Shown: positions 19,455 through 57,100 of the stretch, in pieces | How the letters are laid out: each line of letters starts with the position of its first letter | Numbering within the stretch: the stretch's first letter is position 1 | Virus record (IMG/VR): IMGVR_UViG_3300046003_007892 | Span: 176,364-240,363 of that record | Length of the DNA stretch: 64,000 bases | Direction: 5' to 3' (one strand) | The notes under the pieces: generated by a model | Databases searched by the model: none | The model's input: the letters and a program-made list of their open reading frames with translations, nothing else | What the model was told of the DNA's origin: nothing | Position numbers and translations under genes: made by a program

Positions 19455-19482
19455 TTGACAAGTTATCGGCATGCCTTAAGTT
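19455..19482 (+). promoter_or_regulatory. Sigma70-type early promoter
   Basis: TTGACA-N16-TAAGTT. Confidence 0.7.
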
Positions 19483-21784: not shown

Positions 21785-21816
21785 AGGCCCTCTCGGGAAA
21801 CCGAGGGGGCCTTTTT
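21785..21816 (+). terminator. Rho-independent terminator
   Basis: AGGCCCTCTCGG-GAAA-CCGAGGGGGCCT-TTTT. Confidence 0.8.
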
Positions 21817-21818
21817 GC

Positions 21819-21846
21819 TTGACAAGATAGAACCATGCCCTAATCT
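21819..21846 (+). promoter_or_regulatory. Sigma70-type early promoter
   Basis: TTGACA-N16-TAATCT. Confidence 0.75.
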
Positions 21847-21856
21847 GAGTTCTATT

Positions 21857-29228: not shown

Positions 29229-29560
29229 CTGATCGTCGCGGTTTCCAGGCCGGGCTTAATCTCCATCTCGATCACCGCTGCATCTCTGTACGATGCCGAT
29301 GCGCGAACGCGGATGTTGTCCGCAATATCGGCGAACGCCTGTATTTGCTGGAGGGATACCGCCTCATAGAAGGTGATCTCGGCTTCGCGGCTGCCGTGGT
29401 CGTAATGGACCGGGTGGGCTGTTTCGATGAGGTCGATCTGCATCTTGGCGCAAACTCCCTTCAGCATGGAGATGATCTTCATCTCAGCCTCCGCGCTGGC
29501 ATCCTCTGCCGAGAAGTCGAGTTCAGATTCAGCGAGCAGGAAAGAGATGTAATCGGTCAT
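29225..29560 (-). CDS. Hypothetical protein with LxE leader
   Basis: MTDYISFLLAE, directly after TAAATA. Confidence 0.65.
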   Translation of the reverse strand: MTDYISFLLAESELDFSAEDASAEAEMKIISMLKGVCAKMQIDLIETAHPVHYDHGSREAEITFYEAVSLQQIQAFADIADNIRVRASASYRDAAVIEMEIKPGLETATIS

Positions 29561-29564
29561 CCGG

Positions 29565-29570
29565 TATTTA
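29565..29570 (-). promoter_or_regulatory. Putative late promoter TAAATA
   Basis: 4 nt before ATG 29560. Confidence 0.6.
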
Positions 29571-29605
29571 TCGACACTGCCTCTGGGTCCAGATATCCTT
29601 TCCGG

Positions 29606-30265
29606 GTGTATGATGTCTTCTTCCTCTCCTACGATGAATCCTATGCGACCGCGCACTGGAACAACCTGAAGGGCAAGCACCTACTGGCCCGGCACGTCTC
29701 GGGCATCTGTGGCATCCATGCTGCTCACCGACATTGCGCTGACATTTCGCGCACGAGCCATTTCTTCGTCGTCGATTCCGACAACGAGGTCACTGACCCC
29801 TCAGTGTTCCGCATCAAGCTCCCGGTCTGGGACCGCGACTACGTTCATCTCTGGAACGCCCGCAACCCCGTCAACGGACTCGTCTATGGGTGGGGTGGCA
29901 TCAAGCTTTTCCCCAAGGCCGTATTCGACGACATGACCGACCGGCTGGACATGACAACTTCCTTCCCCCTCAAGCTCATGGACCACACCGCGTCCATCAC
30001 GCACTTCAACGCCACTCCCGAAGCGACGTGGCGGTCGGCCTTCAGGGAATGCGTCAAGCTCAGCCAGAGCCAAGAGTCCGACGCTCAGGTCCGCATGGAG
30101 GTCTGGTGCACCACCGCCAAGGGGGTCTTTGCTGAACACTGCCTGCGAGGCGCACAGGAGGGCCGTGACTACGGTCTAGCCAATATGGGGGACCAGGATG
30201 CCCTGATGCGAATAAACGACTACAGGTGGCTTACAGAGCGTTTTGTGGATAGCCGGTTCATATAG
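29606..30265 (+). CDS. Glycosyltransferase-like protein (GT-A, DxD)
   Basis: YDVFFLSYDE, V.GI.GIH.AH, FFVVDSDN, LVYGWGGIKLFP, AFRECVKL; GTG start inferred. Confidence 0.6.
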   Translation: MYDVFFLSYDESYATAHWNNLKGKHLLARHVSGICGIHAAHRHCADISRTSHFFVVDSDNEVTDPSVFRIKLPVWDRDYVHLWNARNPVNGLVYGWGGIKLFPKAVFDDMTDRLDMTTSFPLKLMDHTASITHFNATPEATWRSAFRECVKLSQSQESDAQVRMEVWCTTAKGVFAEHCLRGAQEGRDYGLANMGDQDALMRINDYRWLTERFVDSRFI

Positions 30266-30818
30266 CCATCCGGCGCCGCTCGACGAGTTCGCGCATGATC
30301 TGCTTCAGGATGGGTTCGTCGGGTGCCTCTTCCTCGTGCCGCATGACGTGGTCGAACATCTGCGACATCTGTTCATAGGAGGCCCGGTGCTGTTTCAACT
30401 CCGAATCTACCCACGCCCACTCTTCGGTCGAGACCGGCTCCGTGAGACAATGCAGGTAGATGAGAGCGTCCAGATAGGCGGCGATCAGGGCTCGGGCTGG
30501 TTGGTCCTTCGGTGCCGACCCGGTGGTCTTGCTGGCCCACGACGCCGGGTCCGTGATCGCATTCTTGGGCGGTTCCGAGGGGAGCATGATCGCTGCCGAA
30601 CATGACCCTTCGCCGGGGGTATGCGAGGTGCTGAAACCCCAGTCGGGATGGCGGGTGCCGATCATCGTCATGGCGGCGTTGAGGTCAGTGATGAGGTTCT
30701 TCCCGTCGAACCAGTCATCGACCAAGACTCCGGCTTCCTCGACCGTCAACGAGTCCGCTTTCCGCCGCCCACCCAAGACTTGTGCGACGACACCAATGCT
30801 CTGAATATCAGGAGCCAT
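30258..30818 (-). CDS. Hypothetical protein
   Basis: Start MAPDIQ; the ORF-track 5' extension is the shadow of neighbouring genes. Confidence 0.55.
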   Translation of the reverse strand: MAPDIQSIGVVAQVLGGRRKADSLTVEEAGVLVDDWFDGKNLITDLNAAMTMIGTRHPDWGFSTSHTPGEGSCSAAIMLPSEPPKNAITDPASWASKTTGSAPKDQPARALIAAYLDALIYLHCLTEPVSTEEWAWVDSELKQHRASYEQMSQMFDHVMRHEEEAPDEPILKQIMRELVERRRMAI

Positions 30819-31116
30819 GTTCGTACTCTGCGATTGCGGCCAGGGCCTGCTCCATGACATCGCGAAGGGCGGCAGCCAGACTGGAAGGTTGCGGGAGGTC
30901 TGCGTGGAAACCACTGTCGAATGGGTCTCGCGGATTCTCGATGTAGTGAATGTGTGGGCTCTCGACAGTGGGTGCGCACGAGGCGTCGCATGACACCTGA
31001 CATTCGCAAACTGAATACCACCAACCCGGAAGTTTGGACTTGAACTCCGCGATAGTGGCTTCGAGGTCAGTCGGCGGTGCCGTCTTCCACTGGAACGAGT
31101 TTTTCTGGGTGACCAT
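30808..31116 (-). CDS. Hypothetical protein
   Basis: Overlapping junctions. Confidence 0.55.
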   Translation of the reverse strand: MVTQKNSFQWKTAPPTDLEATIAEFKSKLPGWWYSVCECQVSCDASCAPTVESPHIHYIENPRDPFDSGFHADLPQPSSLAAALRDVMEQALAAIAEYEHGS

Positions 31117-31615
31117 GTGGAAGAAAATACCTGAGATTGAGTTTCTTGGAAAGGCCCTTCATGGCCTCGATGGCATCGCCCACATCTTCGTAGATTTCTG
31201 GCAGACAGGTCCCCCATGTGAACTCATCCTCGTGAGCATACCAGGGAACACGGCACAGGCTCAGAGTATCGAGGTCGGGAGCGTGAGTTTTCTTTTTCTT
31301 GTTCTTGCTAACGAACCGTTTAATCCGATTGATGCGATAGCCGGTTGGTGCACAGCGGGCTTGGTCGCGAAGGTGGAAACTACAGGTGAACCATGAGCGG
31401 TGTTTGTCGATATCGTTGGCGTTGTCGAAAACAGTGACGCGTCCTTCACTGAACTGCCAGACATGGTTGGCATAGTTGGACAGGAAGGAGTGCGAGGAAT
31501 ACAACTCCCGCAGGACGGTTTCGATGTAGTGCTCGCCCGGCATGATCTCGACCGGGCGCCAACCTGCGTGGTTGCGCCAGATCACGTGCGTGGGGTTCGG
31601 GTGGCTCATCCGCAT
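31067..31615 (-). CDS. Hypothetical protein
   Basis: Starts immediately after glycosyltransferase stop. Confidence 0.55.
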   Translation of the reverse strand: MRMSHPNPTHVIWRNHAGWRPVEIMPGEHYIETVLRELYSSHSFLSNYANHVWQFSEGRVTVFDNANDIDKHRSWFTCSFHLRDQARCAPTGYRINRIKRFVSKNKKKKTHAPDLDTLSLCRVPWYAHEDEFTWGTCLPEIYEDVGDAIEAMKGLSKKLNLRYFLPHGHPEKLVPVEDGTAD

Positions 31616-31616
31616 C

Positions 31617-32438
31617 TTATTGCGCAGAAGGGGTGCTGCTGTCTACCGCTCGGAGCTTATCGGACATCGCCAAGAGGCTACTCTTGAGGTCGCCTTCAAA
31701 TATATGAGACCCATGATGGGACAGCTTGGATTCGACATCGACGAACACCTTGCCACCTATGTTCTGCCAGCGACGGCAGAAAGCATAGTCCTCGCTGAGA
31801 TAGCGGCCACTCTCCTCGGTCATGACGTCAAAGAATCGATAATGGTAGTCGGCCGTTTCGCGGTCTTTCTCGGCCACGCCCAGCATGGCATCCGGGACGT
31901 ATCGGAGGCCGGGGTAGTTGCGCGCCATCCGCTCCAAGGCTTCTCGCTTGATGCACATCAGGCCCGTGGGGGCATCGTGAACTTCCATGAAGCCATACTC
32001 GGTGATTGTGCTGTCGCCACCCGCAACGGGGTTGAAAGGGTAGCGGGTCTGGTGGGCACGGAACTCATCTTCGGTCATTCCCTGCGGTAGACCTTCCTCG
32101 GGCCAGACGATTTTCTTGAGCGGGTAGACGCCCGCGACGACGTCGATATCGATCATGAGCAGACGATAGATGGACATCGGGGAGAAACCGATATCCGCGT
32201 CAATCCACAGCAAGTGCGTGAATTCTTTGCTGGCTAGAAACTCGGCCACAATGGAGTTTCGGGTCCTGGGGATAAGGCTGTCCCCACCCCTCACGATGAA
32301 CGAAATGTTGAGCCCGCGCTTGTTCGCGTCTCCCAGCAGGGTGATCACGCTCAAGAGATAGTTCTGGAACACCTGACCACCGTAACAAGGGGTGGCAATA
32401 CAAACGTGGATGTTCTTGAAGTCTTCAGTCGTAAGCAT
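31617..32438 (-). CDS. Glycosyltransferase family 2-like protein
   Basis: CIATPCYGG, DSLIPRTRN, THLLWIDADIGF, VAGVYPLK, TGLMCIKR, YLSEDYAFC.RW, LSHHG. Confidence 0.75.
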   Translation of the reverse strand: MLTTEDFKNIHVCIATPCYGGQVFQNYLLSVITLLGDANKRGLNISFIVRGGDSLIPRTRNSIVAEFLASKEFTHLLWIDADIGFSPMSIYRLLMIDIDVVAGVYPLKKIVWPEEGLPQGMTEDEFRAHQTRYPFNPVAGGDSTITEYGFMEVHDAPTGLMCIKREALERMARNYPGLRYVPDAMLGVAEKDRETADYHYRFFDVMTEESGRYLSEDYAFCRRWQNIGGKVFVDVESKLSHHGSHIFEGDLKSSLLAMSDKLRAVDSSTPSAQ

Positions 32439-32488
32439 GACTGATGATAGACCGACCGCCACTGAAATGCGAAAATAAAACTATTTGC

Positions 32489-32516
32489 TTGACAAACTCC
32501 ACGGACCCGTTATCTA
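32489..32516 (+). promoter_or_regulatory. Sigma70-type promoter for tRNA-like RNA
   Basis: TTGACA-N16-TATCTA; predicted +1 near G32524. Confidence 0.55.
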
Positions 32517-32523
32517 GGTCGAT

Positions 32524-32682
32524 GGGAGTGTAGCTCAACTCGTAGAGCACCTGTCCCCGACGTCTAGTGTGGGAGCCGTGAAAATCGGCGGCTAGCGACC
32601 CGACAATAACCAGCGAAGGCCAAGCTGGCGACGATAGGCGAGGAGGGCAGGAGGATTCTGGTTTAACGCCCAGACGCACCCA
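32524..32682 (+). ncRNA. tRNA-like RNA with ~88-nt insert replacing the anticodon loop
   Basis: Acceptor GGGAGTG/CGCACCC-A, D arm GCTC-N8-GAGC, stem CCTGTCC/GGGCAGG, variable loop AGGAT, T arm TCTGG-TTTAACGC-CCAGA; no encoded CCA; no readable anticodon. Confidence 0.65.
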
Positions 32683-32790
32683 GGAATTTCATCCGAAAGG
32701 ATTGTCCCCGAGCCGATCAAAGGGTGCACCTAATCGTGCTCGGGGGAAGCCGGTGAGAGCTTCGGCGGGCGAACCCGTACCCCTATATAG

Positions 32791-33843
32791 CTAGAGGACG
32801 ACGAACTGTCCAATAGTATGATCGACCATATACTTGAAGATCGAGTTGATGTTTTCCTCGGCGCGTTCAAGTTCGATTTCCATCTTGTGGGTCTGGTTCT
32901 CAGGGCCGGAATATTGAAGCTCTGCATTCCACGCCTTATACATCTTCATCGCCTTCTCTGAGGTCTTCGGAGCCCCCGGAAGACCGCGTGCAGCGCGGAC
33001 CATGTTCAGGGCCTCGTCTTTGAGCCAGTTGTCCGGTATGGGGTGGTGATAGCCCTGAATGGGTCTCCGCATAGCCTTGAAGAGGGCAAGTTCGTCGCCT
33101 TCAAGCTTTCGTCTCGTGACGGTGCCGTCGATCTCGAAGCGGTTGAACCACACCCGCCCGGCGACCAGATACTGGGCAAAGAGTTCGACGCAATACTCGC
33201 CCGTGTCGCGAATATTCCCCGTGCGGGCAGTGCGGAACGGGGAAATCAATTTGGCTACGGCATTTAGGCGTTCGGTTGCAGACGGGAACGAGCGGGGTTC
33301 GCGCTTGATGAGACCGGCCTGTTCGAAGACGCGCTCCATCGTGTTGATCAAGCTCTGCATGATCTGGGAGGCGGCGTTGCCCTGGCCGATCAGGATACGG
33401 TTCTCCGTTCGCTCGTTGGTTTCCAGAAAGCAGTGACCGATGCGGTGAGCAACAATCCAGGGCGTCAGGCCGACGCGGTCGGTTCCTTCATTCTGCATCA
33501 GGATGACGTTCAAGCGGCCCTGGTAGCCCTCTGGTAGACCTCCGAGAACCTTGTCCGCCCAACCCGGCGCATGCAAGCCCACGTAATCGCGAGCGCGGTC
33601 GAGCTTGATCTCGCTCTTGTGCCCGCCCGGCAGGTTGAAATCTACGCGGCGTTCGGCCGGGCCGTTGACAAAGTAGAGACCAATTTCGTGTTCGGTTTTG
33701 GAGAAAATTTTCTTCACCCGTTCATTCCAGACAGGGTGACGCATCTTCTTCAGGTCTTCGTCACGGAAGCTACCCGCCGTTTCGAGATCGCCCCGATAGC
33801 CCATATCGGCTATCGGAGCTTCCTTGAGGTCTCTGAATCGCAT
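32791..33843 (-). CDS. Putative virion-internal protein, zincin-like HRxGH motif
   Basis: Leader MRFRDLKE; LTPWIVAHRIGHCF...VELFAQY. Confidence 0.65.
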   Translation of the reverse strand: MRFRDLKEAPIADMGYRGDLETAGSFRDEDLKKMRHPVWNERVKKIFSKTEHEIGLYFVNGPAERRVDFNLPGGHKSEIKLDRARDYVGLHAPGWADKVLGGLPEGYQGRLNVILMQNEGTDRVGLTPWIVAHRIGHCFLETNERTENRILIGQGNAASQIMQSLINTMERVFEQAGLIKREPRSFPSATERLNAVAKLISPFRTARTGNIRDTGEYCVELFAQYLVAGRVWFNRFEIDGTVTRRKLEGDELALFKAMRRPIQGYHHPIPDNWLKDEALNMVRAARGLPGAPKTSEKAMKMYKAWNAELQYSGPENQTHKMEIELERAEENINSIFKYMVDHTIGQFVVL

Positions 33844-33844
33844 C

Positions 33845-36800
33845 TTAGCTCCTCTGGACCGAGATTTCGATCACGCCGGTTTCGCCGTCGAAGTTCTCCA
33901 GAGCCTTGCCGATGATCGTGCCCAGCATGGGGTGCAGGGACGTTTCGGCGTGACCCGCGAGGTCCGAGGTGGTGAGGAGGTCGCCCTTGCGGACGGGTCC
34001 CTTGACCTTGCAGGGAACTCGGCCGACGAGAGCCACGTAGGGGTGAGTTTCATCACTGCCCGCGTCCGAGTTCATCATGTAGGCCGGAGCCGTTGAGATG
34101 ACGCCAGCCGAGCGGGTATCGTCGAGACGAAGGCACTGCGTGATTTCTTTGTTGCCGCCGAAGACCATGACGGTGCCGGGCTCATAGATGGCGTCGGCCT
34201 CGTAGCGTTCCGCGACGTCGGCGTATCGTGCCGAGGTGGCCGTACCGGTGAAAACACCAGCGGTGAGGTTGCCAGAGGAATCCCGCTGAGCAATCGTCGA
34301 GGCCGTCGCCGCAGTCGAAGGCGCGGCACCACGGAGAACGTCAGCATCAAGACCAGAACCCGAGCCATCGTTGCCACTGTGCCACAGAATCGAGGTTGAA
34401 CCGTTGGCACAGGCCAGAAGATCAAGTTGGATTCCCTTATTGTTGGTGCCATCATTGTGGTAGATGATGAGCGAGTTCTGACTTGTGGCGAACTGGATGT
34501 TGTGCGTCAGCGAAGTTCCCGATGAGGGCTTCTGCATCTGGAACGAACCAGAACTGAATAGGCCATTGTTGTTACTGACGGGAGTATATCCGAGACGGCT
34601 GGTGATGTCGGTGTAGTAGGTGGAATTGAAACCGTCGAGAAGGTCAGCGTCCAGACCAGACCCGGCGCCATCGGAAACTCCGAAGTTGAGGACGCCCGCG
34701 CCGACGCCACCATCCGTGTAGGTGGCGGTCATCTTCGTCTTGGTTCCGTTGGTCACCATGGTGCCGACGATGTCCTGGATGATTTCCTGGAGGCCTGTGT
34801 TGGTCGAGTCTAGACCGATGGTGATGGCTGCGGATTCCGTGCCGGAACCCGAGACCGTGACGCCGTTGGTGCCGGTTGCCGTGGCGAGGTAGTTGCCCGT
34901 GGTGTGGGTGCCGAGCGTGACCGCGTCTGCGGCCAGTGTGGTCGCGATGGAGCCGTTAGCCAGATTGGTGATCGTGGTCGTGCCGGTGACGGCACCCGTG
35001 AGGGTGACCGAGAAATCATTGACGTCCAGCGTGATCTTGGCCAGAGCGTCGTCATAGACGGCGGTGATGCCAGAATGGGTCGCTCGCGAGAACAAACCAG
35101 CCACGAGGTCTTCCACGCCTTCAACGAAAGTCGAAGCCGTCATGTCGAGACGAACAGTTGCCGCAGCACTTTCACCGGCACCGGTAACCACGATGCCGTT
35201 GGGGGTTGCGCCCGCAACGATGGTTGCCACGTAGTCACCTGCGGTATGGGTGCCGAGCGTGAGGGCGTTTGCGGCAGGAACCGTCGTGATCGTGATCGCC
35301 CCACCGTTGACGATGGTGGCAGTACCGGTGACCGCGCCAGCGAGAGTGACGGCTGTGTCGGGCGTTTGGAAGTTGAGCTTGCCGACGCCGACCGTGGCGT
35401 CATCAAAATACGTGACCGTGACGCCATTGGCAGTGTTGCCGGTGACCATGGTTCCGACGATGTCTTGAATGATCTCGCGGAACGCCGTGTTGGTGCTGTC
35501 GATGGTAATCGACGCGTCTGCGGATTCTACGCCCGCTCCGGTTACAACGAGACCGTTCGAACCCGTAAGGTTCATCAGATAGTTGCCCGTGGTGTGCGTG
35601 CCCAGAGTGACGCCGTTAGCTGCTAGGTTCGTGGCTATCACCGCGCTCGTGAGATTATTAACCCACGCAGTTCCGGTAACGGCTCCAATAAGAGTGATTT
35701 CGAACTCGTTAGCGTCCAGCGTGATCTTGGCCAGAGTGTCATCATAGACGGCGGTGATGCCGGAGTGGGTAGCGCGCGAGAACAGACCGGCGACGATGTC
35801 TTCGACGCCTTCGACAAAAGTAGCTGCGGCGAGGTCGAGGGCGACGGTCGGTGTCGAACCTTCGGCGGCCGACCCGACGACGACAATACCGTTCGCAACG
35901 GTCGCCGCCGTGACGGATGCGACGTAGTTGCCGATGGTGTTCGCGCCGAGCGTGATTGAGTTCGCCACGGTGGTGATCGAAATCGACGCACCGTTTGCGA
36001 TAGTGGCCGAGCCCGATACCGCACCAACGAGAGTGACGGTGGTGTTCGGAGTCTGGAAGTTGAGCTTACCGCCACCCAAACCGACATCATCGAAATAAGA
36101 AACCGTGATGCCGTTCTGCGTGTTACCGGTCACCATCGTGCCGACGATATCCTGGATGGCTTCCCTAAACGCCGTGTTGGTGTCGTCGAGGGAGACGGTG
36201 ATGGCCGCACTCTCGGAGCCCGAGCCAGTGACCGAGATAGCTCCCGACCCAGCGATAGTGGCGACGTAGTTACCCGCCGTGTGTGTGCCGAGAGTAACCG
36301 CGTTGGCGGCCAGCGTGGTCGCAATGGAAGTGTTTCCAAGATTGGTTACTGTGGCAGTACCGGTGATGGGACCGGTCAGGGTCATCGAGAAATCATTGAC
36401 GTCGAGCGTCATCTTTCCGAGCGTGTCGTCGTAGACCGCCGTGAGGCCGGAGTGGGTCGTCGTGAACAACGTCGCGGCGATATCCTGAATACCTTCGACG
36501 AAGGTTGCTGCACCCAAGTTGAGGCTGACGATGGCGTCGGCTCCAGTCGCGGTGCCTCCGGTGACCACGATACCGTTGGCGGTCGAGTCTGTGGCGACCG
36601 TGCGGACGTAGTTGCCGGTGACGGTTGAGTTGCCGAAGTCGATATTCGAGGTCGTGGTGATAGTCAGAGTCGAGCCCAGCGTCAGCACGCCATTACCGGA
36701 GACGGCTCCGTTCAATACGAGGTTCGTGGTCGGCACTGCGAAGTTTAGCTTACCCAGCCCACCCGCGACATCATCGAAATAAGAAACCGTGATGCCGGTC

Positions 36801-38017
36801 TCGGTGTTGCCGGTGACCATTCCGCCGACGATGTCCTGAATGGCTTCGACGAACGAGGTGTCAGTGGTGTTGAGGCCGACCGTGATGTCCGCGCTCTCCG
36901 AGGTGCCACCCGACACCGTGATGCCGTTCGAGCTTCCCGCGACCGTGCGCACGTATGCACCCGATGTATCTGTGCCGAGCACGATTGCGTTGGGAGTCAC
37001 GGTCGTGTTGATCGTGACGTTGCTTAGGCCGACTACGCTAGCCGTGCCCTGGACCGCGCCCGCCAAAGTGACGGAGAAATCGTTGGTAGTGAAGTTGAGC
37101 TTACCGGTGCCCTCGGTGGCGTCGTTATAGACGACAGAAATACCAGTCTCGGTGTTGCCGGTGACCATTCCGCCGACGATGTCCTGGATTTCTTCAGCCG
37201 TGTAGGCTTTCTCGACGGTGACCTTCAGATTTGAGGTAGAGCCATCGGTTTCGACAAGAACACCAGAACCAACGAAGTTGATCTGCGTAATTGAGTTGGC
37301 GAGGCCGACCGTGATGCCTTCGTCCTTGACTGTCATGCGACCGAACGCGCTCGACGGGAAGTTTTCGAACTGCGACGTGGCCGAGTTGTAGATGAGAACG
37401 TCGCCATTCAGAAGTGTGCTGGTGGTGACGTCTGTCAGGTCTGCTAGGCCCGCGCTCAGCGTAAGGGTGACGTTGCTAGACAGTGCACCACCGCCGCTGA
37501 GACCAGCACCAGCAATTACGGTACGCGAGGTCGGCACGGCTCCGATTGCAGTTGTGGTCGGAAGAGCGTGGACGTGATCAGCGCGCGAAACCGAGTTAGA
37601 AACACCGATTGCGGCTGCGCCGAGATTTGCAGGAGCGGAGCCGCCGTATACGACGCCCACCGTTAGCGCGCCACCCGCTCCACCATCGCTGAGGACGACG
37701 CCTGCGGCGGCCTGTAGACGACGTTCGTTCGGGAGGGCGGCTTCTGCCGAGACGACCAAGTAGGTGGCGTTGGGGTCCGCACCAGAAACAGTGCCGCCGC
37801 CTCCGCCGCTGATGCCTGCCGACGTTGCTTTTGCAGCGAAGGTTTCGTTGGTGATGTTGCCTAGGTCAACACGGGCTGCCTCGAATCCGTTCGCAGTGAT
37901 ACCGTCGTGGATATGAAGAGACTTGTTGGTCGTATTGACAGTAATTTCAGCCTGCGCACCGACGAAGGTCGAGTGTTGTGACGCTGTGCCTTTACGAAGT
38001 TTTAGCTCTTTAGCCAT
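33845..38017 (-). CDS. Long tail fibre/appendage with ~115-aa repeats and C-terminal intramolecular chaperone (peptidase G2-like)
   Basis: N-term LKLRKGT...EITVNT..KSLHIHDG, Thr/Gly/Val-rich repeats, GSGLDAD.L.G motifs, C-term YADVAERY...GTV..FGG...VALVGRVPCKV.G...KGDLL...GTIIGKALE. Confidence 0.85.
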   Translation of the reverse strand: MAKELKLRKGTASQHSTFVGAQAEITVNTTNKSLHIHDGITANGFEAARVDLGNITNETFAAKATSAGISGGGGGTVSGADPNATYLVVSAEAALPNERRLQAAAGVVLSDGGAGGALTVGVVYGGSAPANLGAAAIGVSNSVSRADHVHALPTTTAIGAVPTSRTVIAGAGLSGGGALSSNVTLTLSAGLADLTDVTTSTLLNGDVLIYNSATSQFENFPSSAFGRMTVKDEGITVGLANSITQINFVGSGVLVETDGSTSNLKVTVEKAYTAEEIQDIVGGMVTGNTETGISVVYNDATEGTGKLNFTTNDFSVTLAGAVQGTASVVGLSNVTINTTVTPNAIVLGTDTSGAYVRTVAGSSNGITVSGGTSESADITVGLNTTDTSFVEAIQDIVGGMVTGNTETGITVSYFDDVAGGLGKLNFAVPTTNLVLNGAVSGNGVLTLGSTLTITTTSNIDFGNSTVTGNYVRTVATDSTANGIVVTGGTATGADAIVSLNLGAATFVEGIQDIAATLFTTTHSGLTAVYDDTLGKMTLDVNDFSMTLTGPITGTATVTNLGNTSIATTLAANAVTLGTHTAGNYVATIAGSGAISVTGSGSESAAITVSLDDTNTAFREAIQDIVGTMVTGNTQNGITVSYFDDVGLGGGKLNFQTPNTTVTLVGAVSGSATIANGASISITTVANSITLGANTIGNYVASVTAATVANGIVVVGSAAEGSTPTVALDLAAATFVEGVEDIVAGLFSRATHSGITAVYDDTLAKITLDANEFEITLIGAVTGTAWVNNLTSAVIATNLAANGVTLGTHTTGNYLMNLTGSNGLVVTGAGVESADASITIDSTNTAFREIIQDIVGTMVTGNTANGVTVTYFDDATVGVGKLNFQTPDTAVTLAGAVTGTATIVNGGAITITTVPAANALTLGTHTAGDYVATIVAGATPNGIVVTGAGESAAATVRLDMTASTFVEGVEDLVAGLFSRATHSGITAVYDDALAKITLDVNDFSVTLTGAVTGTTTITNLANGSIATTLAADAVTLGTHTTGNYLATATGTNGVTVSGSGTESAAITIGLDSTNTGLQEIIQDIVGTMVTNGTKTKMTATYTDGGVGAGVLNFGVSDGAGSGLDADLLDGFNSTYYTDITSRLGYTPVSNNNGLFSSGSFQMQKPSSGTSLTHNIQFATSQNSLIIYHNDGTNNKGIQLDLLACANGSTSILWHSGNDGSGSGLDADVLRGAAPSTAATASTIAQRDSSGNLTAGVFTGTATSARYADVAERYEADAIYEPGTVMVFGGNKEITQCLRLDDTRSAGVISTAPAYMMNSDAGSDETHPYVALVGRVPCKVKGPVRKGDLLTTSDLAGHAETSLHPMLGTIIGKALENFDGETGVIEISVQRS

Positions 38018-38031
38018 TTACAAAAGTATCC

Positions 38032-41000
38032 TTAAATAATGGAGCCGAGGTTGATATCAGCCTCGATAATCCCGCCCTCCATGGTGCCCATGTCGAGACT
38101 TGCTCCGTATTTATCCGTGATAGAACCGAAGTCGATTTTGTCTTGACGATGCCAACCATCGTTGAGGCTGTAGAATTTCAGGACAACTTTTCCGTTCGCC
38201 GCGTCATCCACGAATTCGGGGAAGATTTCGTCAGTGGCCTGGACGTCGATGGAGGGTCGCTCACCAATCAGGACTCCGTTGAGGAGGAACTGGGTGTTGC
38301 CAAGGATTTCGTCGCTCTGCGCAGAGATCGTGACGTTGCCGCCAGGGCCGCCGTCGTTGATCGTGATGCCGACGCCAGCCGTGAGCTTGCGGGCGTTGGG
38401 AACGTTCGCAGAGCCGTTGTCAATGAGGAGGAATTTCTCGTTCGCGGGCGAGTTGGGGATGTAGACGGTTGCGATTTCTCCATCCACGGATACCGCTGAC
38501 GTAACGCCGCCGCCGACGAAGTTAATCGAGGTAACCGCCGTGCCTGCTGTGGTGCCTTCGTCGCGAACCTCAACTCCTCGGTCAGCGAATGATTCAGTGA
38601 CGATGGTGACCTTGCCGGTGTCCGCGCTGCCATCGAACAGCATGGTGCCGTTGCCGGTAACCGCGCCCGCCAGAGTGATCTGGAGAGGCTTGATCGCCAT
38701 CTTGATGAACTCGTTGGACGAATCGTAGGTGACCTGAATACCACCACGGTCTCCGATCATGAGATCGCGAACCAGGGTCTTGACCTGGGCAGGGGATGAG
38801 CCGCTCGCCACACTGATGGTCGCCACGCCGTTCGCCACGGTAGCCGTGCCGCCGACGACGTTGAGTTCTTTGACCTTCGTGCCTTGCAAGACGCCGCCTT
38901 GCTTAACCGTCATGCCTTCGATGAAGTTCGATGAGGTAGCTATCTGGACACTGTTCAGGCGAACCACGCGCGCCGTGCCGGTGACTGCGCCCGTCAAGGT
39001 GATGTCGAACTCTCGCGCACCGAGTTCCAGTACGTTGTTCTCGTCGTCGTAGTTGACCGTGATGCCCGTCTCGGTAGGCAAATTGGTATTTGGGTCACGA
39101 GACGTGCCACGGATGAAACCACCAACCTCATCACGAACGTCGGTGTTGGTGAGCAAGATGGGCGCGTCAACGGTCAGGATATCACCAGACTGCGTGGCAG
39201 TGATCGCGCCACCCGTGAACACTACCTGCTTAACCGAATGCGCGAGACCGAGTTGGTTCGAACCATCAAACGCGGTCAGGCCTGTGATATAGTTGGACGA
39301 AGTAGTAATCGTGATGTCGTTGAGGCTGGTGACAGTCGCGTTGCCGGTTACCGCCCCAGCAAGGGTGACCTTGAACGCGCGCGGAGCGAGCGAGATCGTG
39401 TTGTTGGATTGGTCGTAGTAGACGAAGATACCGGTCTCGCTTTCCTGAAGGGTCTGCGGGTCACGGATGGTTCCTCTGATCAGGCTGCCGACTTGGTCTT
39501 GAACGTCCTGTTGGCTTAGTGCGGAGACCGACACCGTGGTGGTATTTCCGACCTGGGTCGTAGTGACGTTCGGCCCGGTGAAATTGATGTTGCGAACGGA
39601 TTCGGCCGCACCCGTTGCGGTTCCCGACGAGCGAGTCGTCAAACCTTCGATGAAGTTCGTCGAAGTGTTGATCGTCGTGTTGCCCAGATAGTGGACCGTC
39701 GCGGTTCCGGTAACGTCTCCAGTCAGGGTGATGGTGAAATCGCGCGGCGCCAGCGACAGGGTGTTGTTGGATTGGTCGTAGAAGACCAGGATGCCGGTTT
39801 CGCTTTCCTGAAGGGTCTGCGGGTCACGGATGCTGCCGCGAACGAACGTGCCAACTTCATCTCGAATGTCAGAAGCCGCTAGAGGAGTTGGGATATTGAC
39901 TCGTAGGGTGGAGCCGGACTGGATAGCATCCACGCCGCCCCCCACGAAGTTGATCGCTTGAATGGTCTGAGTTCCACCCGTCAGAAGGTCTTCGTTGTAG
40001 CCGGTCAGACCAGTGATGTAGTTAGATGACGTAGCTATGGAGACGTTGTTGAGGCGCGAAACAGTTCCGGTGCCGGTGACAGCACCCGTGAGTGTGATTG
40101 AGAACGTCCGGGGCGCAACAGAAATCGTGTTGTTTGCCGCATCGTAGAAGACAGCGATGCCGGATTCGGTTTCGGCCAGTGTCTGGGGGTCACGGATGGT
40201 GCCCCTGATCAGGTTGCCGACTTGGTTCTGGATATCCAGCGTGCTCAGAGAGTTGATCGAGATGCTGGCGGTATTGCCGACCTGAACGGCGGTTACGCCG
40301 GTTCCGATGAAGTTGAGCGTGCTGATCTGGTTCGCCGCACCAGTTGGAGTACCCTCGTTCTGGACGTTGAGACCCAGGAGATAGTCGGCCTCGGTCGTGA
40401 TAGTTGTGTTGCCCAGATAATGGACGACCGCATTGCCTCGAACGGCACCGGCCAACGTGATTTTGAAATCACGTGGAGCAATGGACAGCGTGTTGTTTGA
40501 CGCATCATAGTAGGTGAGGATGCCGGTTTCGGTATCGATGAGAGTTTGGGGGTCGCGGATGCTGCCCCGGATGAAACCACCGACCTCGTCGCGAACATCG
40601 CCCAGTGTCAAAGCTTGCGGAATAGTGACGTTGAGGCGAGAACCAACTTGCGTGGTCGAGACGCCGTTACCGATGAAGTTGATCTCTTGAACGGTCTGCG
40701 GTGTTCCGACGAGGGGATTTCCTTCATCGAAAGCAGTCAGGCCTTTGAGGAAATCAGCCGAGGTCACCATCGTGACGCTGTTGAGGCGCGTGATCGTGGC
40801 CGTGCCGGTTACGGCTCCGCTGAGAGTGATTGAGAAGGTGCGCGGCGACAGTGACAGGGTATTGTTGACCGCATCATAGTAGACCGAGATGCCAGATTCG
40901 GTTTCTTGTTCGGTGTTGGGGTCGCGGACGGTTCCTCGAATGAAGGAGCCGACTTCGTCGCGAACATCGCCCAAGCTCAGCCCGGTAACCGTCACGGTCG

Positions 41001-42144
41001 CGGTGTCTCCGGTCTGTGTTGCCGTTACCCCGTTGCCACGGAAGTCCAAGACTTTCGCGGTATTTGGCGTGCCAACCGGCGTGCCTTCGTCGCGTATAGA
41101 CAAACCCTTGAGGAAGTTTGCGGTCGTCGTGATGGTCGTGTTGCCCAAGTAGTGGACCAGACCAGAGCCGGTGACGTCCCCAGCCAGCGTGATGGTGAAG
41201 TCGCGCGGGACAAGCGAAAGAGTGGCGTTGTTCTGGTCGTAGTAGACCTGAATACCGGTCTCGGATTCTTCGAGCGTATCAGGGTCGCGAATGCTGCCCT
41301 GGACCACGGCGCCGATCTCGTCGCGGACGTCCTGGATACTGACGCCGAGATCGGGGTTGAGGACAGTTTCGATCTCAATGTCCTGGAGGTTGCTGACCAT
41401 CATAGAGCCAGTGACTGCACCATGAAGGTTGACATTAAAGGTGCGGGGTACGAACGCCGCGTGGATGTCTCCGGGACCATAGATGACCGAAATACCGTTA
41501 GCGTGCGGGCCACCCAGAAGGGCCGTCGCATAGGTGCGAAGACCAAAAAGGTTGACCGCGTCCGTATCGTCAGTCGGTGCCTGATCGACCGTCAGCGTCC
41601 CCGTCACCCGCAGGGTAGCGAATGTGCCATCTCCGGTTTGACCGGCCGAGTTGACGAGCTTCCAACCACCAACGGTGTAAACTTCGACCCCACCCAGCGT
41701 GGTGTTGAAACGCAGCATGCCTTCTTCGCCGGACAAGGGCCGGGTCTCGGACGCGCCGGTTGGGAGCTTCAAGTAAGCCGTGGACGGAATTTCTACCCCG
41801 CCCTCGGAATCAGTGGTGACGACCGTTCGCCACCCAGTTCCATCGTGGAACTGCGGAACACCCGCGTAGCGGAGCATGCCCGCCGAAGGAGTTACTGATG
41901 GGCTGCCACTCGGAACGATGAAGGCGTTGTTGAGGAAAGACAGAGTGGTGAAGACTTGGCCTTCTGCGCTCAAGCTATGGTTGACCGCAAGAACGCTCGA
42001 AGTCGTGTTGGTGGCTGTCTGAAGATTTTCGATGGCGCGTTTGATCACCGTGAAGTTATCACGGAAACCTTGCGATGGCTGATCTACGCCTCTTACAGGG
42101 AAGTTCTCATTGTAAGTGGCGCCCACGCCTGTATCAATCGCCAT
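38032..42144 (-). CDS. Long repeat-rich virion structural/fibre protein
   Basis: N-term FPVRGVDQPSQGFRDNF..IK; about 8 repeats of DVRDEVG..IRG..RDP.T..E.ETGI.VYYD..NNTLS..PR.F.ITL.G.VTG. Confidence 0.8.
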   Translation of the reverse strand: MAIDTGVGATYNENFPVRGVDQPSQGFRDNFTVIKRAIENLQTATNTTSSVLAVNHSLSAEGQVFTTLSFLNNAFIVPSGSPSVTPSAGMLRYAGVPQFHDGTGWRTVVTTDSEGGVEIPSTAYLKLPTGASETRPLSGEEGMLRFNTTLGGVEVYTVGGWKLVNSAGQTGDGTFATLRVTGTLTVDQAPTDDTDAVNLFGLRTYATALLGGPHANGISVIYGPGDIHAAFVPRTFNVNLHGAVTGSMMVSNLQDIEIETVLNPDLGVSIQDVRDEIGAVVQGSIRDPDTLEESETGIQVYYDQNNATLSLVPRDFTITLAGDVTGSGLVHYLGNTTITTTANFLKGLSIRDEGTPVGTPNTAKVLDFRGNGVTATQTGDTATVTVTGLSLGDVRDEVGSFIRGTVRDPNTEQETESGISVYYDAVNNTLSLSPRTFSITLSGAVTGTATITRLNSVTMVTSADFLKGLTAFDEGNPLVGTPQTVQEINFIGNGVSTTQVGSRLNVTIPQALTLGDVRDEVGGFIRGSIRDPQTLIDTETGILTYYDASNNTLSIAPRDFKITLAGAVRGNAVVHYLGNTTITTEADYLLGLNVQNEGTPTGAANQISTLNFIGTGVTAVQVGNTASISINSLSTLDIQNQVGNLIRGTIRDPQTLAETESGIAVFYDAANNTISVAPRTFSITLTGAVTGTGTVSRLNNVSIATSSNYITGLTGYNEDLLTGGTQTIQAINFVGGGVDAIQSGSTLRVNIPTPLAASDIRDEVGTFVRGSIRDPQTLQESETGILVFYDQSNNTLSLAPRDFTITLTGDVTGTATVHYLGNTTINTSTNFIEGLTTRSSGTATGAAESVRNINFTGPNVTTTQVGNTTTVSVSALSQQDVQDQVGSLIRGTIRDPQTLQESETGIFVYYDQSNNTISLAPRAFKVTLAGAVTGNATVTSLNDITITTSSNYITGLTAFDGSNQLGLAHSVKQVVFTGGAITATQSGDILTVDAPILLTNTDVRDEVGGFIRGTSRDPNTNLPTETGITVNYDDENNVLELGAREFDITLTGAVTGTARVVRLNSVQIATSSNFIEGMTVKQGGVLQGTKVKELNVVGGTATVANGVATISVASGSSPAQVKTLVRDLMIGDRGGIQVTYDSSNEFIKMAIKPLQITLAGAVTGNGTMLFDGSADTGKVTIVTESFADRGVEVRDEGTTAGTAVTSINFVGGGVTSAVSVDGEIATVYIPNSPANEKFLLIDNGSANVPNARKLTAGVGITINDGGPGGNVTISAQSDEILGNTQFLLNGVLIGERPSIDVQATDEIFPEFVDDAANGKVVLKFYSLNDGWHRQDKIDFGSITDKYGASLDMGTMEGGIIEADINLGSII

Positions 42145-42174
42145 TTTTCCCCAACCCAATCAAGTAGTGTGGGG

Positions 42175-55592: not shown

Positions 55593-55868
55593 TGCCAGAC
55601 GAAGCTTCCATTCGAAAAAACACGCCTGTGCACGGACGAGATCGCTTGCTTGGGTGAAGTGCCAGGGTCGCCCTATTCCTCGCATGACTGACCAGCCGGG
55701 ACCGAATACGGCGTCGGACGTGGTGCCGTGGTGAACCCAAACTCCGATCTCGTCCATTACCGCTCGTCCATCAATGATATAGCGATGGATGGCACGGCTA
55801 GGCCGCGTGATCTTCACCCACTCACGCAGGATTTCGAGGTTCTCCGGCGTGAGTGGGTGTTCGGTCAC
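55590..55868 (-). CDS. Hypothetical protein
   Basis: GTGA overlap with cca stop; start VTEHPL. Confidence 0.5.
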   Translation of the reverse strand: MTEHPLTPENLEILREWVKITRPSRAIHRYIIDGRAVMDEIGVWVHHGTTSDAVFGPGWSVMRGIGRPWHFTQASDLVRAQACFFEWKLRLA

Positions 55869-57100
55869 AGGCCCTGTTTGGCCAGCAGGCCGTTCAGGAA
55901 GTCGTTGGTGCGGTTCATGTCGAACCAGACCTTGACCCATTCTTCTTCGGTCGCGCGCAGGATGTCGCCCATGGCCTTGCCGGGCTTCATGCCACGGTCG
56001 ATCAGCATCGCCCCCGAGATCGGGAACACGCGGGGAGCCAGACGGCCCACCTTGTTGATCTGATCGGCCAGCGTATCGAAATCGAACGGCAGGCCACAGG
56101 CCCAGGTCAGGGCCATGCGGTCACGAACGGCCACGACGCCATCGCGGTAGATGTGCTGCTCGATGCTGTCGAACCACGCGTCTCCGCCCATCTCGGTGAA
56201 CGGTCCCTGCTTGATCGCGTTGGTGACCCGCTGACGCGAGGCGTTCGAGAACCGCAGGCGAGCCATGACGTCCCCGCAGGCCTGCATATCCCAGTTGAAC
56301 AGGGAGGCGAAGCGGGGGGCCCAGTCGGTCGTGGCTTGACAGACGCGGGTGAACACACGGGCGTCAAACGCGACCGGGAAGATGGTCGAGTAGACCTCGG
56401 TGCGCTGCATGGCCTCCAGAGCGGGGACGGGGTTGCCCGCGCCCAGCAGCTTGGAGATTTCCTTCTCGATGCGTTCGCCGGACAGGCTCGCGATTCCGTC
56501 CCGTTGCGCCTTGCAGGCGGCCAGGGCTTCGGCGGAGATGTCCGCACCCAGAACCGCCATGAAGCGGAACAGGCGCAGGCTGCGCAGGTGATCTTCGCGC
56601 AGACGCTGCTCGGCGTCGCCGACGAACTGGATACGACGGGCCTTGGCGTCTTCAATGCCGCCGCGCGTCGGGTCATAGACGGTTCCGTCCGGGCCCAGAT
56701 ACAGGGCGTTGAAGCGGAAGTCGCGACGTTGCGCGTCTTCGGCCCAGTCCTTCGTAAAGGCGATCACGGCGCGGCGGCCATCGGTCTCGACGTCGCGGCG
56801 CAGCGTCGTGAACTCGTAGGCGGTCTTGTTGATGATGACCGAGACCGTGCCGTGCTCGATGCCCGTGGGGATGACATCGAAACCTTCCAAGCGGAAGATG
56901 TCCGAGATCAGCGTGGGTTCCAGAGTGGTGGCGATGTCGATGTCGCCGCACTGGCGGCCCATGATGGAGTCACGCACGCACCCGCCGACGAAGCGGTAGG
57001 AATCCGCAGGCGCATGCACATCCATGATCGCGATGATCGATTGGATGGCCGGGGTCGAGAACCAATCCGGGCGCAGGGTCAGGGTCTTCGGCGTGCTCAT
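55865..57100 (-). CDS. cca: CCA tRNA nucleotidyltransferase (class II)
   Basis: FVGGCVRD, DIDIATT, GIEHGTV, EFTTLRRDVETDGRRA, DAQRRDFRFNALY, EDHLR.LR.FRF, SGERI..E..KLL. Confidence 0.92.
   Translation of the reverse strand: MSTPKTLTLRPDWFSTPAIQSIIAIMDVHAPADSYRFVGGCVRDSIMGRQCGDIDIATTLEPTLISDIFRLEGFDVIPTGIEHGTVSVIINKTAYEFTTLRRDVETDGRRAVIAFTKDWAEDAQRRDFRFNALYLGPDGTVYDPTRGGIEDAKARRIQFVGDAEQRLREDHLRSLRLFRFMAVLGADISAEALAACKAQRDGIASLSGERIEKEISKLLGAGNPVPALEAMQRTEVYSTIFPVAFDARVFTRVCQATTDWAPRFASLFNWDMQACGDVMARLRFSNASRQRVTNAIKQGPFTEMGGDAWFDSIEQHIYRDGVVAVRDRMALTWACGLPFDFDTLADQINKVGRLAPRVFPISGAMLIDRGMKPGKAMGDILRATEEEWVKVWFDMNRTNDFLNGLLAKQGL

What the first reader, a model, noticed from the sequence alone, without database searches (positions are those of the whole stretch)
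32489..32682. tRNA-shaped RNA whose anticodon loop is replaced by an ~88-nt structured insert
Seen: a complete cloverleaf frame of acceptor GGGAGUG/CGCACCC+A (one A-A mismatch, one G-U), D arm GCUC/GAGC, an extended stem CCUGUCC/GGGCAGG (32550-56 / 32645-51), a 5-nt variable loop and T arm UCUGG/CCAGA. The insert (32557-32644) holds hairpins AGCCG/CGGCU and CCAGC/GCUGG. D-loop GG and T-loop UUC are altered (CG, UUU), there is no U33 or anticodon, and no G3-U70, so it is neither a standard tRNA nor tmRNA. It has its own promoter, and the phage encodes a CCA enzyme. Inference: a natural tRNA-scaffolded RNA, such as a decoy for anticodon nucleases or synthetases, an intron-containing tRNA, or a carrier for a functional insert.
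Basis: partly seen in the sequence, partly recalled or inferred. Interest (0 to 1): 0.8.

Follow-up and report, generated by a model that had tools for sequence, protein, structure and literature searches.

The report
Phage tRNA-derived RNA with giant arm
An uncultivated 240-kb phage carries a small gene, with its own promoter, for an RNA with a near-complete tRNA body whose anticodon loop is replaced by a roughly 100-nucleotide structured arm; it cannot decode, has no relatives I could find, and its function is untested.

Summary

- **Not chance.** A loose frame alone is common, with 16 in the window. Only this one carries 13 of 15 conserved tRNA nucleotides. Its D arm is identical over 20 nt to real phage tRNAs.
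- **Own promoter.** It belongs to a repeated phage promoter family (6 copies, 0.15 expected). That family also drives the phage CCA-adding enzyme gene. It places the transcription start at or next to G1.
- **Strand.** Folding stability is specific to the + strand. The overlapping minus-strand ORF does not look coding.
- **Not a working tRNA.** There is no anticodon loop or U33, the T loop has 8 nt with U56, and there is an A-A mismatch in the acceptor stem. ARAGORN at default settings, Rfam and an independent tRNA model all miss it.
- **Other kinds ruled out.** It is not a tmRNA, a YrlA-type Y RNA, or a group I or archaeal-type intron.
- **No comparative or expression evidence.** No homolog of the insert was found. 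All seven contigs carrying the locus are identical there. The tool for finding sequencing runs was closed.

Best reading (about 0.45): a transcribed, tRNA-scaffolded non-coding RNA. A recently disabled tRNA gene (about 0.25) is not excluded.

The parts
32481..32516 (+). Promoter. It has an upstream CTATTTGC motif, a -35 TTGACA (32489-32494), a 16-nt spacer and a -10 TATCTA (32511-32516). The predicted transcription start is at 32523 or 32524.
   Evidence: The motif CTATTTGCTTGACA occurs 6 times in the window against 0.15 expected. Copies at 10744 (+) and 57135 (-) put an ATG exactly 7 nt after the -10. The one at 57100 is the start of the CCA-adding enzyme gene. The generic sigma-70 scan did not list this site, because its -10 is weak.
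32524..32682 (+). The tRNA-derived RNA, 159 nt up to the discriminator A. No CCA is encoded.
   Evidence: The minimum-energy fold is the cloverleaf. It has 13 of 15 conserved tRNA nucleotides. Model R1, built from it, aligns end to end with real tRNAs once the insert is skipped (E = 2.6e-9 and 1e-8). The + strand gives z = -2.4 and the - strand +0.6.
32524..32530 (+). Acceptor stem, 5' strand GGGAGUG. It pairs with 32675-32681.
   Evidence: Six of 7 positions pair, with A4-A69 mismatched and U6-G67 a wobble. Position 3-70 is G-C, not G-U.
32533..32548 (+). D arm, GCUC-AACUCGUA-GAGC, with C in place of G18.
   Evidence: The 20-mer GTAGCTCAACTCGTAGAGCA is identical to the D arm of phage tRNAs Thr, His, Phe and a CUA suppressor. 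It occurs in no tRNA of 185,579 species genomes.
32550..32651 (+). Extended arm replacing the anticodon stem-loop. It runs 7 bp, a bulged A, 2 bp, a GA/A internal loop, 6 bp, a G/A mismatch and 3 bp, then a three-way junction with hairpins at 32571-32601 and 32610-32628.
   Evidence: Fold. The arm alone gives z = -3.0 (2 of 500 shuffles fold as well) on the + strand and z = -0.2 on the - strand.
32557..32644 (+).
   Evidence: No match in GenBank phages, IMG/VR or about 450 kb of fetched related loci. No Rfam family matches.
32657..32674 (+). T arm, UCUGG-UUUAACGC-CCAGA. The loop has 8 nt with U56. G53-C61, U54 and A58 are kept.
32675..32682 (+). Acceptor stem 3' strand CGCACCC plus the discriminator A. 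It is followed by GGA, not CCA.
32683..32790 (.). Cluster of G+C-rich hairpins between the RNA and the stop codon of the convergent 350-aa gene. It is probably a 3' trailer, a two-way terminator, or both.
   Evidence: z = -2.9 on the + strand and -2.6 on the - strand. No U-tract terminator was found.
55865..57100 (-). Phage CCA-adding enzyme gene, driven by the same promoter family. It is a candidate maturation enzyme for the CCA-less RNA.
   Evidence: Pfam PolyA_pol 8.2e-28 plus PolyA_pol_RNAbd. The promoter copy is at 57143-57107.

Best explanation
This is a real, independently transcribed gene for a tRNA-derived non-coding RNA.

Proposed mechanism:
1. Host RNA polymerase starts at or next to G1 (32523/32524), from a promoter of the class that also drives the phage CCA-adding enzyme gene.
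2. The transcript folds into a tRNA-like L-shaped body. The acceptor, D and T arms and the core tertiary pairs are present.
3. Its 3' end is trimmed after A32682 and receives CCA from the host or phage enzyme.
4. The tRNA body gives the RNA tRNA-type processing and stability.
5. The roughly 100-nt arm that replaces the anticodon stem-loop is the working part. It would bind a protein or RNA that is still unknown.
6. With no anticodon loop it cannot decode, and it is probably not aminoacylated.

Shown here: the sequence, the fold, tRNA ancestry, the promoter family and the strand asymmetry. Inferred: transcription, processing, stability, and any binding partner.
For: - The minimum-energy fold is the cloverleaf.
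- It has 13 of 15 conserved tRNA nucleotides, including U8, A14, A21, R15-Y48, G53-C61, U54 and A58. Chance frames score 2-9.
- By direct reading, the core triples 9-12-23, 13-22-46 and 10-25-45 can also form.
- Its D arm is identical over 20 nt to functional-looking phage tRNAs. Model R1 matches them at E = 1e-8 to 3e-4.
- The promoter motif is repeated 6 times against 0.15 expected. In two copies the gene start sits exactly at +7, and the RNA's G1 sits at +8.
- The promoter fires against a block of minus-strand genes, with no + strand ORF downstream.
- Folding stability is specific to the + strand: z = -2.4 to -3.0 against about 0.
- The overlapping minus-strand ORF has a non-coding codon score, -0.23 against +0.34 and +0.38 bits per codon for the neighbouring genes. 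The source's gene caller left the gap empty.
- All four stems are intact. The insert continues the anticodon stem as a helix and leaves no remnant of an anticodon loop.
- The phage encodes a CCA-adding enzyme, an ArgRS and a LysRS fragment.
Against: - No homolog of the insert or of the whole RNA turned up in GenBank phages, IMG/VR, one metagenome scan, one genome scan or about 450 kb of related loci. There is therefore no covariation or conservation evidence.
- All seven contigs that carry the locus are identical across the 352-nt gap. With about 1.5 variable sites expected, that is uninformative.
- ARAGORN at default settings, Rfam and an independent tRNA model R2 do not detect it.
- The 8-nt T loop, U56 and the A4-A69 mismatch could be signs of decay.
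- The -10 hexamer is weak and there is no canonical terminator.
- Expression could not be checked.
Confidence: 0.45

Rival explanations
1. A recently disabled tRNA gene, i.e. a pseudogene. In this reading a phage tRNA lost its anticodon loop to an insertion or rearrangement. It may still be transcribed from its old promoter but does nothing.
For: - There is no anticodon loop or U33, the T loop has 8 nt with U56, and A4-A69 is mismatched.
- Standard detectors and an independent tRNA model fail to find it.
- The insert is found nowhere else.
- Homologs of the neighbouring 350-aa gene sit beside normal tRNA arrays in related phages, so a tRNA at this spot is expected.
Against: - All four stems and 13 of 15 conserved nucleotides are intact.
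- The insert prolongs the anticodon stem as one stable helix (arm z = -3.0) and leaves no loop remnants. A random insertion would not be expected to do that.
- A full copy of the phage promoter is kept at the exact start distance.
- The genome is otherwise tightly packed, and this is the largest gap in the 64 kb.
Confidence: 0.25
2. There is no stable tRNA-like product. The promoter makes an antisense or regulatory transcript that runs into the 3' end of the convergent 350-aa and tail-fibre operon, or is stopped by the hairpin cluster. In this reading the tRNA-like fold is only a 5' structure left over from ancestry.
For: - The promoter points against a block of minus-strand genes running from 30258 to 42159.
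- No intrinsic terminator follows the RNA.
- The hairpin cluster at 32683-32790 is structured on both strands.
Against: The tRNA-type nucleotides and tertiary-pair positions are kept far beyond what a plain 5' hairpin needs. The start site coincides with G1.
Confidence: 0.2
3. An intron-containing tRNA. One candidate is tRNA-Arg(CCG), read from CCCCGA at positions 32-37. ARAGORN's relaxed call is tRNA-Pro(CGG). In this reading an intron of about 83-85 nt is removed by an unknown route.
For: ARAGORN with introns at relaxed thresholds calls tRNA-Pro(cgg) with an 83-nt intron at position 37/38. The phage encodes an ArgRS.
Against: - That ARAGORN threshold yields 40-299 hits per window.
- Position 33 is C, not U.
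- At 88 nt the insert is far below group I intron size, and Rfam Intron_gpI does not match.
- By reading the fold, there is no bulge-helix-bulge motif, meaning two 3-nt bulges separated by 4 bp.
- The related tRNA arrays contain no introns.
Confidence: 0.05

Closest known systems
tmRNA (SsrA)
   Same: It has a tRNA-like acceptor stem and T arm with open 5' and 3' ends, and the anticodon arm is replaced by a long helix leading to a large inserted domain. It is also found in some large phages.
   Different: - tmRNA needs G3:U70 for alanylation, has no D stem, and carries pseudoknots and a tag reading frame. It is 230-400 nt long.
- This RNA has G3-C70, a full D arm, no tag frame and 159 nt.
- ARAGORN in tmRNA mode and Rfam find nothing.
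Phage T4 RNA species I and II, stable RNAs in the T4 tRNA gene cluster
   Same: They are phage-encoded stable small RNAs tied to tRNA biology and matured with the tRNAs. Their genes lie in the tRNA cluster and belong to the tRNA precursor transcript (PMC2330249). That their role is unknown is my own recollection.
   Different: - The T4 RNAs are co-transcribed within a 1.75-kb tRNA precursor, whereas this RNA has its own promoter and no neighbouring tRNAs.
- There is no sequence similarity to any GenBank phage record. I take that collection to include T4.
Bacterial and phage Y RNA-like YrlA
   Same: It is a non-coding RNA with a domain that mimics the tRNA D arm, T arm and acceptor stem. Some are cut by RNase P and receive CCA, and they occur in phages (PMC4201824).
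   Different: - In YrlA the 5' and 3' ends form the Ro60-binding stem at the anticodon position, and the acceptor-like stem is closed by a loop.
- YrlA has a GNCGAAN0-1G motif near its 5' end and lies within 4 kb of a Ro60 (TROVE) gene.
- Here the topology is that of a normal tRNA, no such 5' motif is present, no TROVE gene was found in the window, and Rfam gives no hit.
Engineered tRNA scaffold for recombinant RNA expression (Ponchon and Dardel)
   Same: The architecture is the same: a tRNA body with the anticodon stem extended and the loop replaced by a structured RNA of interest. That design is used because cells process and stabilise it like a tRNA (PMC3753655 was listed; the rest is my own knowledge).
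   Different: That design is man-made. A natural counterpart with a non-tmRNA insert has not, to my knowledge, been described.
Phage tRNAs with the D arm GUAGCUCAACUCGUAGAGCA
   Same: They share an identical 20-nt D arm, including C in place of G18, and the same cloverleaf body.
   Different: Those have normal 7-nt anticodon loops (Thr CGU, His GUG, Phe GAA, suppressor CUA), 7-nt T loops with C56, and lengths of about 73-76 nt.

Membership tests
Canonical tRNA | Cloverleaf with a 7-bp acceptor stem, a D arm, an anticodon arm and a T arm | tested here: met
   The minimum-energy fold gives all four arms. The acceptor stem pairs at 6 of 7 positions.
Canonical tRNA | Conserved and tertiary-pair nucleotides (U8, A14, R15-Y48, G18G19, A21, G53-C61, T54, psi55, C56, R57, A58) | tested here: inconclusive
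   13 of 15 are present. G18 (here C) and C56 (here U) are missing. C18 also occurs in real phage tRNAs.
Canonical tRNA | 5-bp anticodon stem closing a 7-nt loop with U33 and an anticodon | tested here: not met
   The stem continues into a 102-nt arm. Positions 32 and 33 are C and are paired.
Canonical tRNA | Detected by tRNA models | tested here: not met
   ARAGORN at default settings finds none. Rfam finds none at the gathering threshold or at E <= 10. An independent phage-tRNA model, R2, gives no hit at E <= 10 with filters off.
tmRNA | G3:U70 alanine identity pair | tested here: not met
   The pair at positions 3 and 70 is G-C.
tmRNA | Tag reading frame and pseudoknots; detected by tmRNA models | tested here: not met
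   ARAGORN in tmRNA mode finds nothing even at a 70% threshold. No Rfam tmRNA hit. The insert is only 88 nt.
Group I intron in a tRNA anticodon loop | Group I catalytic core (P3-P9), usually more than 200 nt | tested here: not met
   No Intron_gpI match at E <= 10. The insert is 88 nt.
Archaeal or eukaryal-type tRNA intron | Bulge-helix-bulge motif at the exon-intron junctions, with the intron at position 37/38 | tested here: not met
   The fold shows a 1-nt bulge and a 2x1 internal loop. It does not show two 3-nt bulges separated by 4 bp.
YrlA-type Y RNA | RNA ends form the Ro60-binding stem; GNCGAAN0-1G motif near the 5' end; Ro60 (TROVE) gene within about 4 kb on the same strand (PMC4201824) | tested here: not met
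   The ends lie at the acceptor stem. The 5' end reads GGGAGUGUAG. No TROVE domain appeared among 84 ORFs scanned with Pfam. No Rfam hit.
T4 species I/II stable RNAs | Sequence homology and a position inside a co-transcribed tRNA cluster | tested here: not met
   blastn at 65-70% sensitivity against 50,697 phage records found nothing. No tRNA lies in the 64-kb window, and the RNA has its own promoter.
Natural tRNA-scaffolded non-coding RNA (working class, not a curated family) | Discrete stable transcript with tRNA-type 5' and 3' ends and added CCA | not testable with these tools

The most novel reading that the evidence does not exclude
A phage has turned one of its own tRNAs into a natural tRNA scaffold. 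The RNA starts at its mature 5' end and is finished by the phage's co-regulated CCA-adding enzyme. It then displays a 100-nt structured arm as an effector. One possible role is as a sponge or decoy for host factors that recognise the tRNA acceptor end or elbow, for example defence toxins that modify tRNA 3' ends. Another is as an RNA-based anti-defence or regulatory module. This would be a second natural solution, besides tmRNA, of the type 'tRNA body plus functional insert in place of the anticodon'.
Probability: 0.25. Interest if true: 0.8.

Novelty: new variant of a known kind. Interest (0 to 1): 0.5.

Why it matters
If the RNA is made and stable, it would be a natural example of the tRNA-scaffold design that biotechnologists invented. 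It would also be a new type of phage tRNA-like non-coding RNA alongside tmRNA, YrlA and the T4 species I/II RNAs.

Phage tRNAs are now seen as players in the contest with host tRNA-targeting defences. A tRNA body that cannot decode but keeps its acceptor end and core would point to functions other than translation.

It also shows that standard tRNA and Rfam annotation misses such genes. The practical weakness is that the phage is uncultivated and the RNA is so far a singleton.

Tried and rejected
- **Diversity-generating retroelement template.** The upstream tail-fibre protein has an Mtd_N domain. I found no repeat of the intergenic region in the fibre genes and no reverse transcriptase, so I rejected this.
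- **Synteny with neighbours.** Relatives of the 273-aa glycosyltransferase-like neighbour are not syntenic. In L025 and L026 the tail fibre is followed almost directly by that gene, with no large gap. Relatives of the 350-aa neighbour carry normal tRNA-Leu arrays instead, with no intron-bearing tRNAs.
- **Homolog searches.** These were blastn and nhmmer of the 352-nt gap against all loci; model R1 over about 450 kb of loci; and exact-word scans of IMG/VR with four pieces of the RNA. I also ran one metagenome scan and one genome scan. They returned only the phage itself, chance matches in coding regions, or ordinary tRNAs that share the D arm.
- **Repeats.** No copy of the insert occurs elsewhere in the window.
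- **Minus-strand protein.** The 84-aa ORF at 32425-32679 was rejected on its codon score.
- **Population variation.** There are 38 variable sites in about 9 kb and none in the gap, but only 1.5 were expected there. This is uninformative.
- **The 350-aa neighbour.** Its model is confident, but there is no PDB match. The Atlas gave only weak zincin-like and LPD leads.

Full report
**Where it lies.** The window is part of IMGVR_UViG_3300046003_007892, a 240,363-bp phage contig. The candidate sits in a 352-nt gap (32439-32790) between two minus-strand genes. One is a 273-aa glycosyltransferase-like gene (31617-32438; phrog_1574). The other is a 350-aa gene of unknown function (32791-33843). Downstream of these lie two giant repeat-rich tail-fibre-like genes, one with an Mtd_N domain. 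This is the largest gap between my greedy ORF picks in the window. The source's gene caller placed no gene in it.

**Checking the observation.** The minimum-energy fold of 32524-32682 is the cloverleaf: -62.2 kcal/mol, z about -2.3 to -2.4.
- The T loop has 8 nt (UUUAACGC), not 7.
- ARAGORN at default settings and Rfam, at gathering scores and at E <= 10 on 600 nt, report nothing.

**Is it more than chance?**
- The bare frame is not. ARAGORN with introns accepts the site, as 'tRNA-Pro(cgg), 83-nt intron', only at thresholds of 88% or lower. At 88% the window gives 40 hits, and at 80% it gives 299.
- My own loose frame scan required an acceptor stem with at most 1 mismatch, a 4-bp D stem, a 5-bp anticodon stem, any insert of 7-200 nt and a 5-bp T stem. 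It finds 16 frames in 64 kb.
- The content of this frame is exceptional. It has 13 of 15 conserved tRNA nucleotides: U8, G10, Y11-R24, A14, R15, A21, Y48, G53, T54, T55, R57, A58 and C61. The other 15 frames score 2-9 and real tRNAs score 13-15.
- By direct reading, the classical core triples (A9-U12-A23, C13-G22-G46, G10-C25-G45) and the R15-Y48 pair can also form.
- The 20-mer GTAGCTCAACTCGTAGAGCA (positions 7-26, the D arm and its flanks) is identical to the D arm of bona fide tRNAs in phage-like contigs. These are a CUA suppressor in a 202.5-kb contig, tRNA-Thr(CGU) (one copy on a 631-kb contig), tRNA-His and tRNA-Phe.
- The same 20-mer occurs only three times in 185,579 species genomes, never in a tRNA. 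The 'altered' D loop (C for G18) is therefore a phage tRNA variant, not damage.
- A covariance model of the candidate (R1) aligns end to end with these tRNAs once the insert is skipped (E = 2.6e-9 to 3e-4). It also matches a tRNA in a related phage's array.
- An independent tRNA model, R2, built from 18 tRNAs not chosen by similarity to the candidate, does not reach E <= 10 at this site. As a whole, the RNA falls outside what tRNA models accept.

**Transcription.**
- The motif CTATTTGCTTGACA upstream of the RNA recurs, with up to 2 mismatches, 6 times in the window against 0.15 expected.
- Five of the six copies share the layout TTGACA, 16-17 nt, TAnnnn.
- At 10744 (+) and 57135 (-) the A of an ATG lies exactly 7 nt after the -10. 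The first ATG (10778) starts a 192-aa ORF. The second (57100) starts the CCA-adding enzyme gene. Both transcripts are therefore predicted to be leaderless.
- At 21819 (+) an ATG follows after 11 nt, in frame with a 2OG-Fe(II) oxygenase.
- For the RNA, position +7 is T32523 and +8 is G32524, which is G1 of the acceptor stem. The transcript should therefore start at or one base before the mature 5' end.
- The promoter fires against the surrounding block of minus-strand genes, and no + strand ORF follows.
- The generic sigma-70 scan did not list the site, since its -10 (TATCTA) is weak. No U-tract terminator follows.
- Instead, 32683-32790 holds G+C-rich hairpins that are stable on both strands (z = -2.9 and -2.6).

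**Which strand.** The tRNA-like part and its arm fold better than shuffles only on the + strand (z = -2.4 and -3.0). On the - strand the values are +0.6 and -0.2. The 84-aa minus-strand ORF across the site scores -0.23 bits per codon, against +0.34 and +0.38 for its neighbours.

**Context.**
- The phage encodes a CCA-adding enzyme (55865-57100, -), an arginyl-tRNA synthetase (48768-50393, -) and part of a class I lysyl-tRNA synthetase (22-1185, +). ARAGORN finds no tRNA in the 64 kb.
- In relatives L025 and L026 the Mtd_N fibre gene is followed almost directly by the 273-aa homolog. The 350-aa gene and the RNA gap therefore look like an insertion here.
- Homologs of the 350-aa protein at 47-53% identity lie next to arrays of 5-8 tRNA genes on the opposite strand, almost all tRNA-Leu (L021-L024). 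Another homolog lies next to synthetase genes (L028). A tRNA-type gene beside this protein is thus a recurring arrangement.
- The protein itself gives a confident model (pLDDT 87) with no PDB match. The Atlas gave only weak zincin-like and LPD leads.

**Conservation.**
- Seven contigs from different samples carry the locus. They differ at 38 sites in about 9 kb, but none of those sites is in the 352-nt gap. Only about 1.5 were expected there, so this says nothing.
- No diverged copy of the RNA or its insert was found anywhere I could search.

**What it is not.**

| Candidate kind | Why it fails |
|---|---|
| Working tRNA | No anticodon loop or U33 |
| tmRNA | G3-C70, no tag frame, 159 nt, no ARAGORN or Rfam tmRNA hit |
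| Group I intron | No Rfam hit; the insert is only 88 nt |
| Archaeal-type intron | No bulge-helix-bulge in the fold |
| YrlA Y RNA | Ends at the acceptor stem, no GNCGAA motif at the 5' end, no TROVE gene (PMC4201824) |
| Homolog of T4 species I/II RNAs | No sequence match to any GenBank phage (PMC2330249) |

**Interpretation.** The evidence shows a tRNA-derived element on the + strand, behind a genuine phage promoter that starts at its first base. Its tRNA core is intact, and a stable helical arm stands in place of the anticodon stem-loop.
- I favour (0.45) a functional tRNA-scaffolded non-coding RNA. The tRNA body would provide maturation and stability, and the arm would be the effector.
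- A recently disabled tRNA gene (0.25) would explain the 8-nt T loop, U56, the A-A mismatch and the lack of relatives. It explains less well the intact stems, the seamless helix and the retained promoter.
- An antisense or regulatory transcript with no tRNA-like product (0.2) remains possible.
- A spliced tRNA (0.05) also remains possible.

Function is inferred. Only sequence, fold, ancestry, promoter family and strand bias are shown.

Noticed in passing
window 10736-10778 (+), 19447-19482 (+), 21811-21857 (+), 32481-32524 (+), 57143-57100 (-): A phage promoter family, CTATTTNCTTGACA-N16/17-TAnnnn. In two copies the ATG lies exactly 7 nt after the -10 (10778, and 57100 for the CCA-adding enzyme gene), so those mRNAs should be leaderless. 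The copy at 21811 suggests that the 2OG-Fe(II) oxygenase gene really starts at ATG 21857, not at GTG 21683.
   Followed up: partly
window 48768-50393 (-), 22-1185 (+), 55865-57100 (-): The phage encodes an arginyl-tRNA synthetase, part of a class I lysyl-tRNA synthetase (its ORF starts 22 nt from the window's left edge and matches only the C-terminal half of the Pfam model) and a CCA-adding enzyme. Yet ARAGORN finds no tRNA gene in these 64 kb.
   Followed up: partly
L021:7587-8766, L022:571-1204, L023:2222-3151, L024:4454-5383 (all minus strand of the locus): Related phages carry arrays of 5-8 tRNA genes that are almost all tRNA-Leu, with anticodons CAG, GAG, CAA, UAA and UAG, and several duplicated. 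L023 and L024 also have one 94-nt 'tRNA-Cys'. The arrays lie next to the homolog of the 350-aa protein, with dual-specificity phosphatase and ART-PolyVal genes nearby. A Leu-only tRNA array is unusual and I have no explanation for it.
   Followed up: no
window 32791-33843 (-); alignment A2: The 350-aa protein family has an invariant LTPW..AHR..H motif, usually LTPWIVAHRIGH, plus conserved glutamates. Only 14 members exist among 5.8 billion proteins. The AlphaFold model is confident (pLDDT 87) but has no PDB fold match. The Atlas gives weak leads to zincin-like metallopeptidases and LPD (polyvalent-protein) domains. It recurs beside tRNA arrays or synthetase genes.
   Followed up: partly
L033:4702-4777 = L039:2584-2659; L036:4109-4182; L037:7150-7223; L038:2214-2289; L047:8382-8454: The tRNA D arm GUAGCUCAACUCGUAGAGCA, with C in place of the near-universal G18, occurs in phage tRNAs of four identities (Thr, His, Phe, CUA suppressor). 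It occurs in no tRNA of 185,579 bacterial and archaeal species genomes. This may be a phage-specific tRNA variant.
   Followed up: partly
L033:4702-4777 (IMGVR_UViG_3300017971_000002, 202,503 bp): An amber-suppressor tRNA (anticodon CUA, with CCA encoded) sits in a tRNA array of a 202.5-kb phage contig. This hints at stop-codon recoding in that phage.
   Followed up: no
window 33845-38017 (-) and 38032-42159 (-): Two adjacent giant genes (1390 and 1375 aa) are built from internal repeats of about 690 nt and about 366 nt. The first has an Mtd_N (major tropism determinant) N-terminal domain. They look like tail fibres. No template repeat or reverse transcriptase of a diversity-generating retroelement was seen nearby.
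   Followed up: partly
window, various; vWA-TerF-like at 4714-5466 (+): Pfam hits among the window's ORFs include a tellurite-resistance-type set (TerD, TelA, TerC, DUF475, vWA-TerF). They also include an Acb1 anti-CBASS protein, a GroEL-type chaperonin, thymidylate synthase, DHFR, a dCMP deaminase, a PAAR domain and a CHAP domain. Apart from vWA-TerF, their coordinates were not resolved.
   Followed up: no
window 30067-30090 and 35071-35073, compared with L019: One population variant (JGI 3300046002) differs at 10 positions within 24 nt inside ORF 29345-30265 and at 3 consecutive bases in the fibre gene. The rest of the 6.5 kb has only scattered single changes. These look like local recombination or hypervariable patches.
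   Followed up: no
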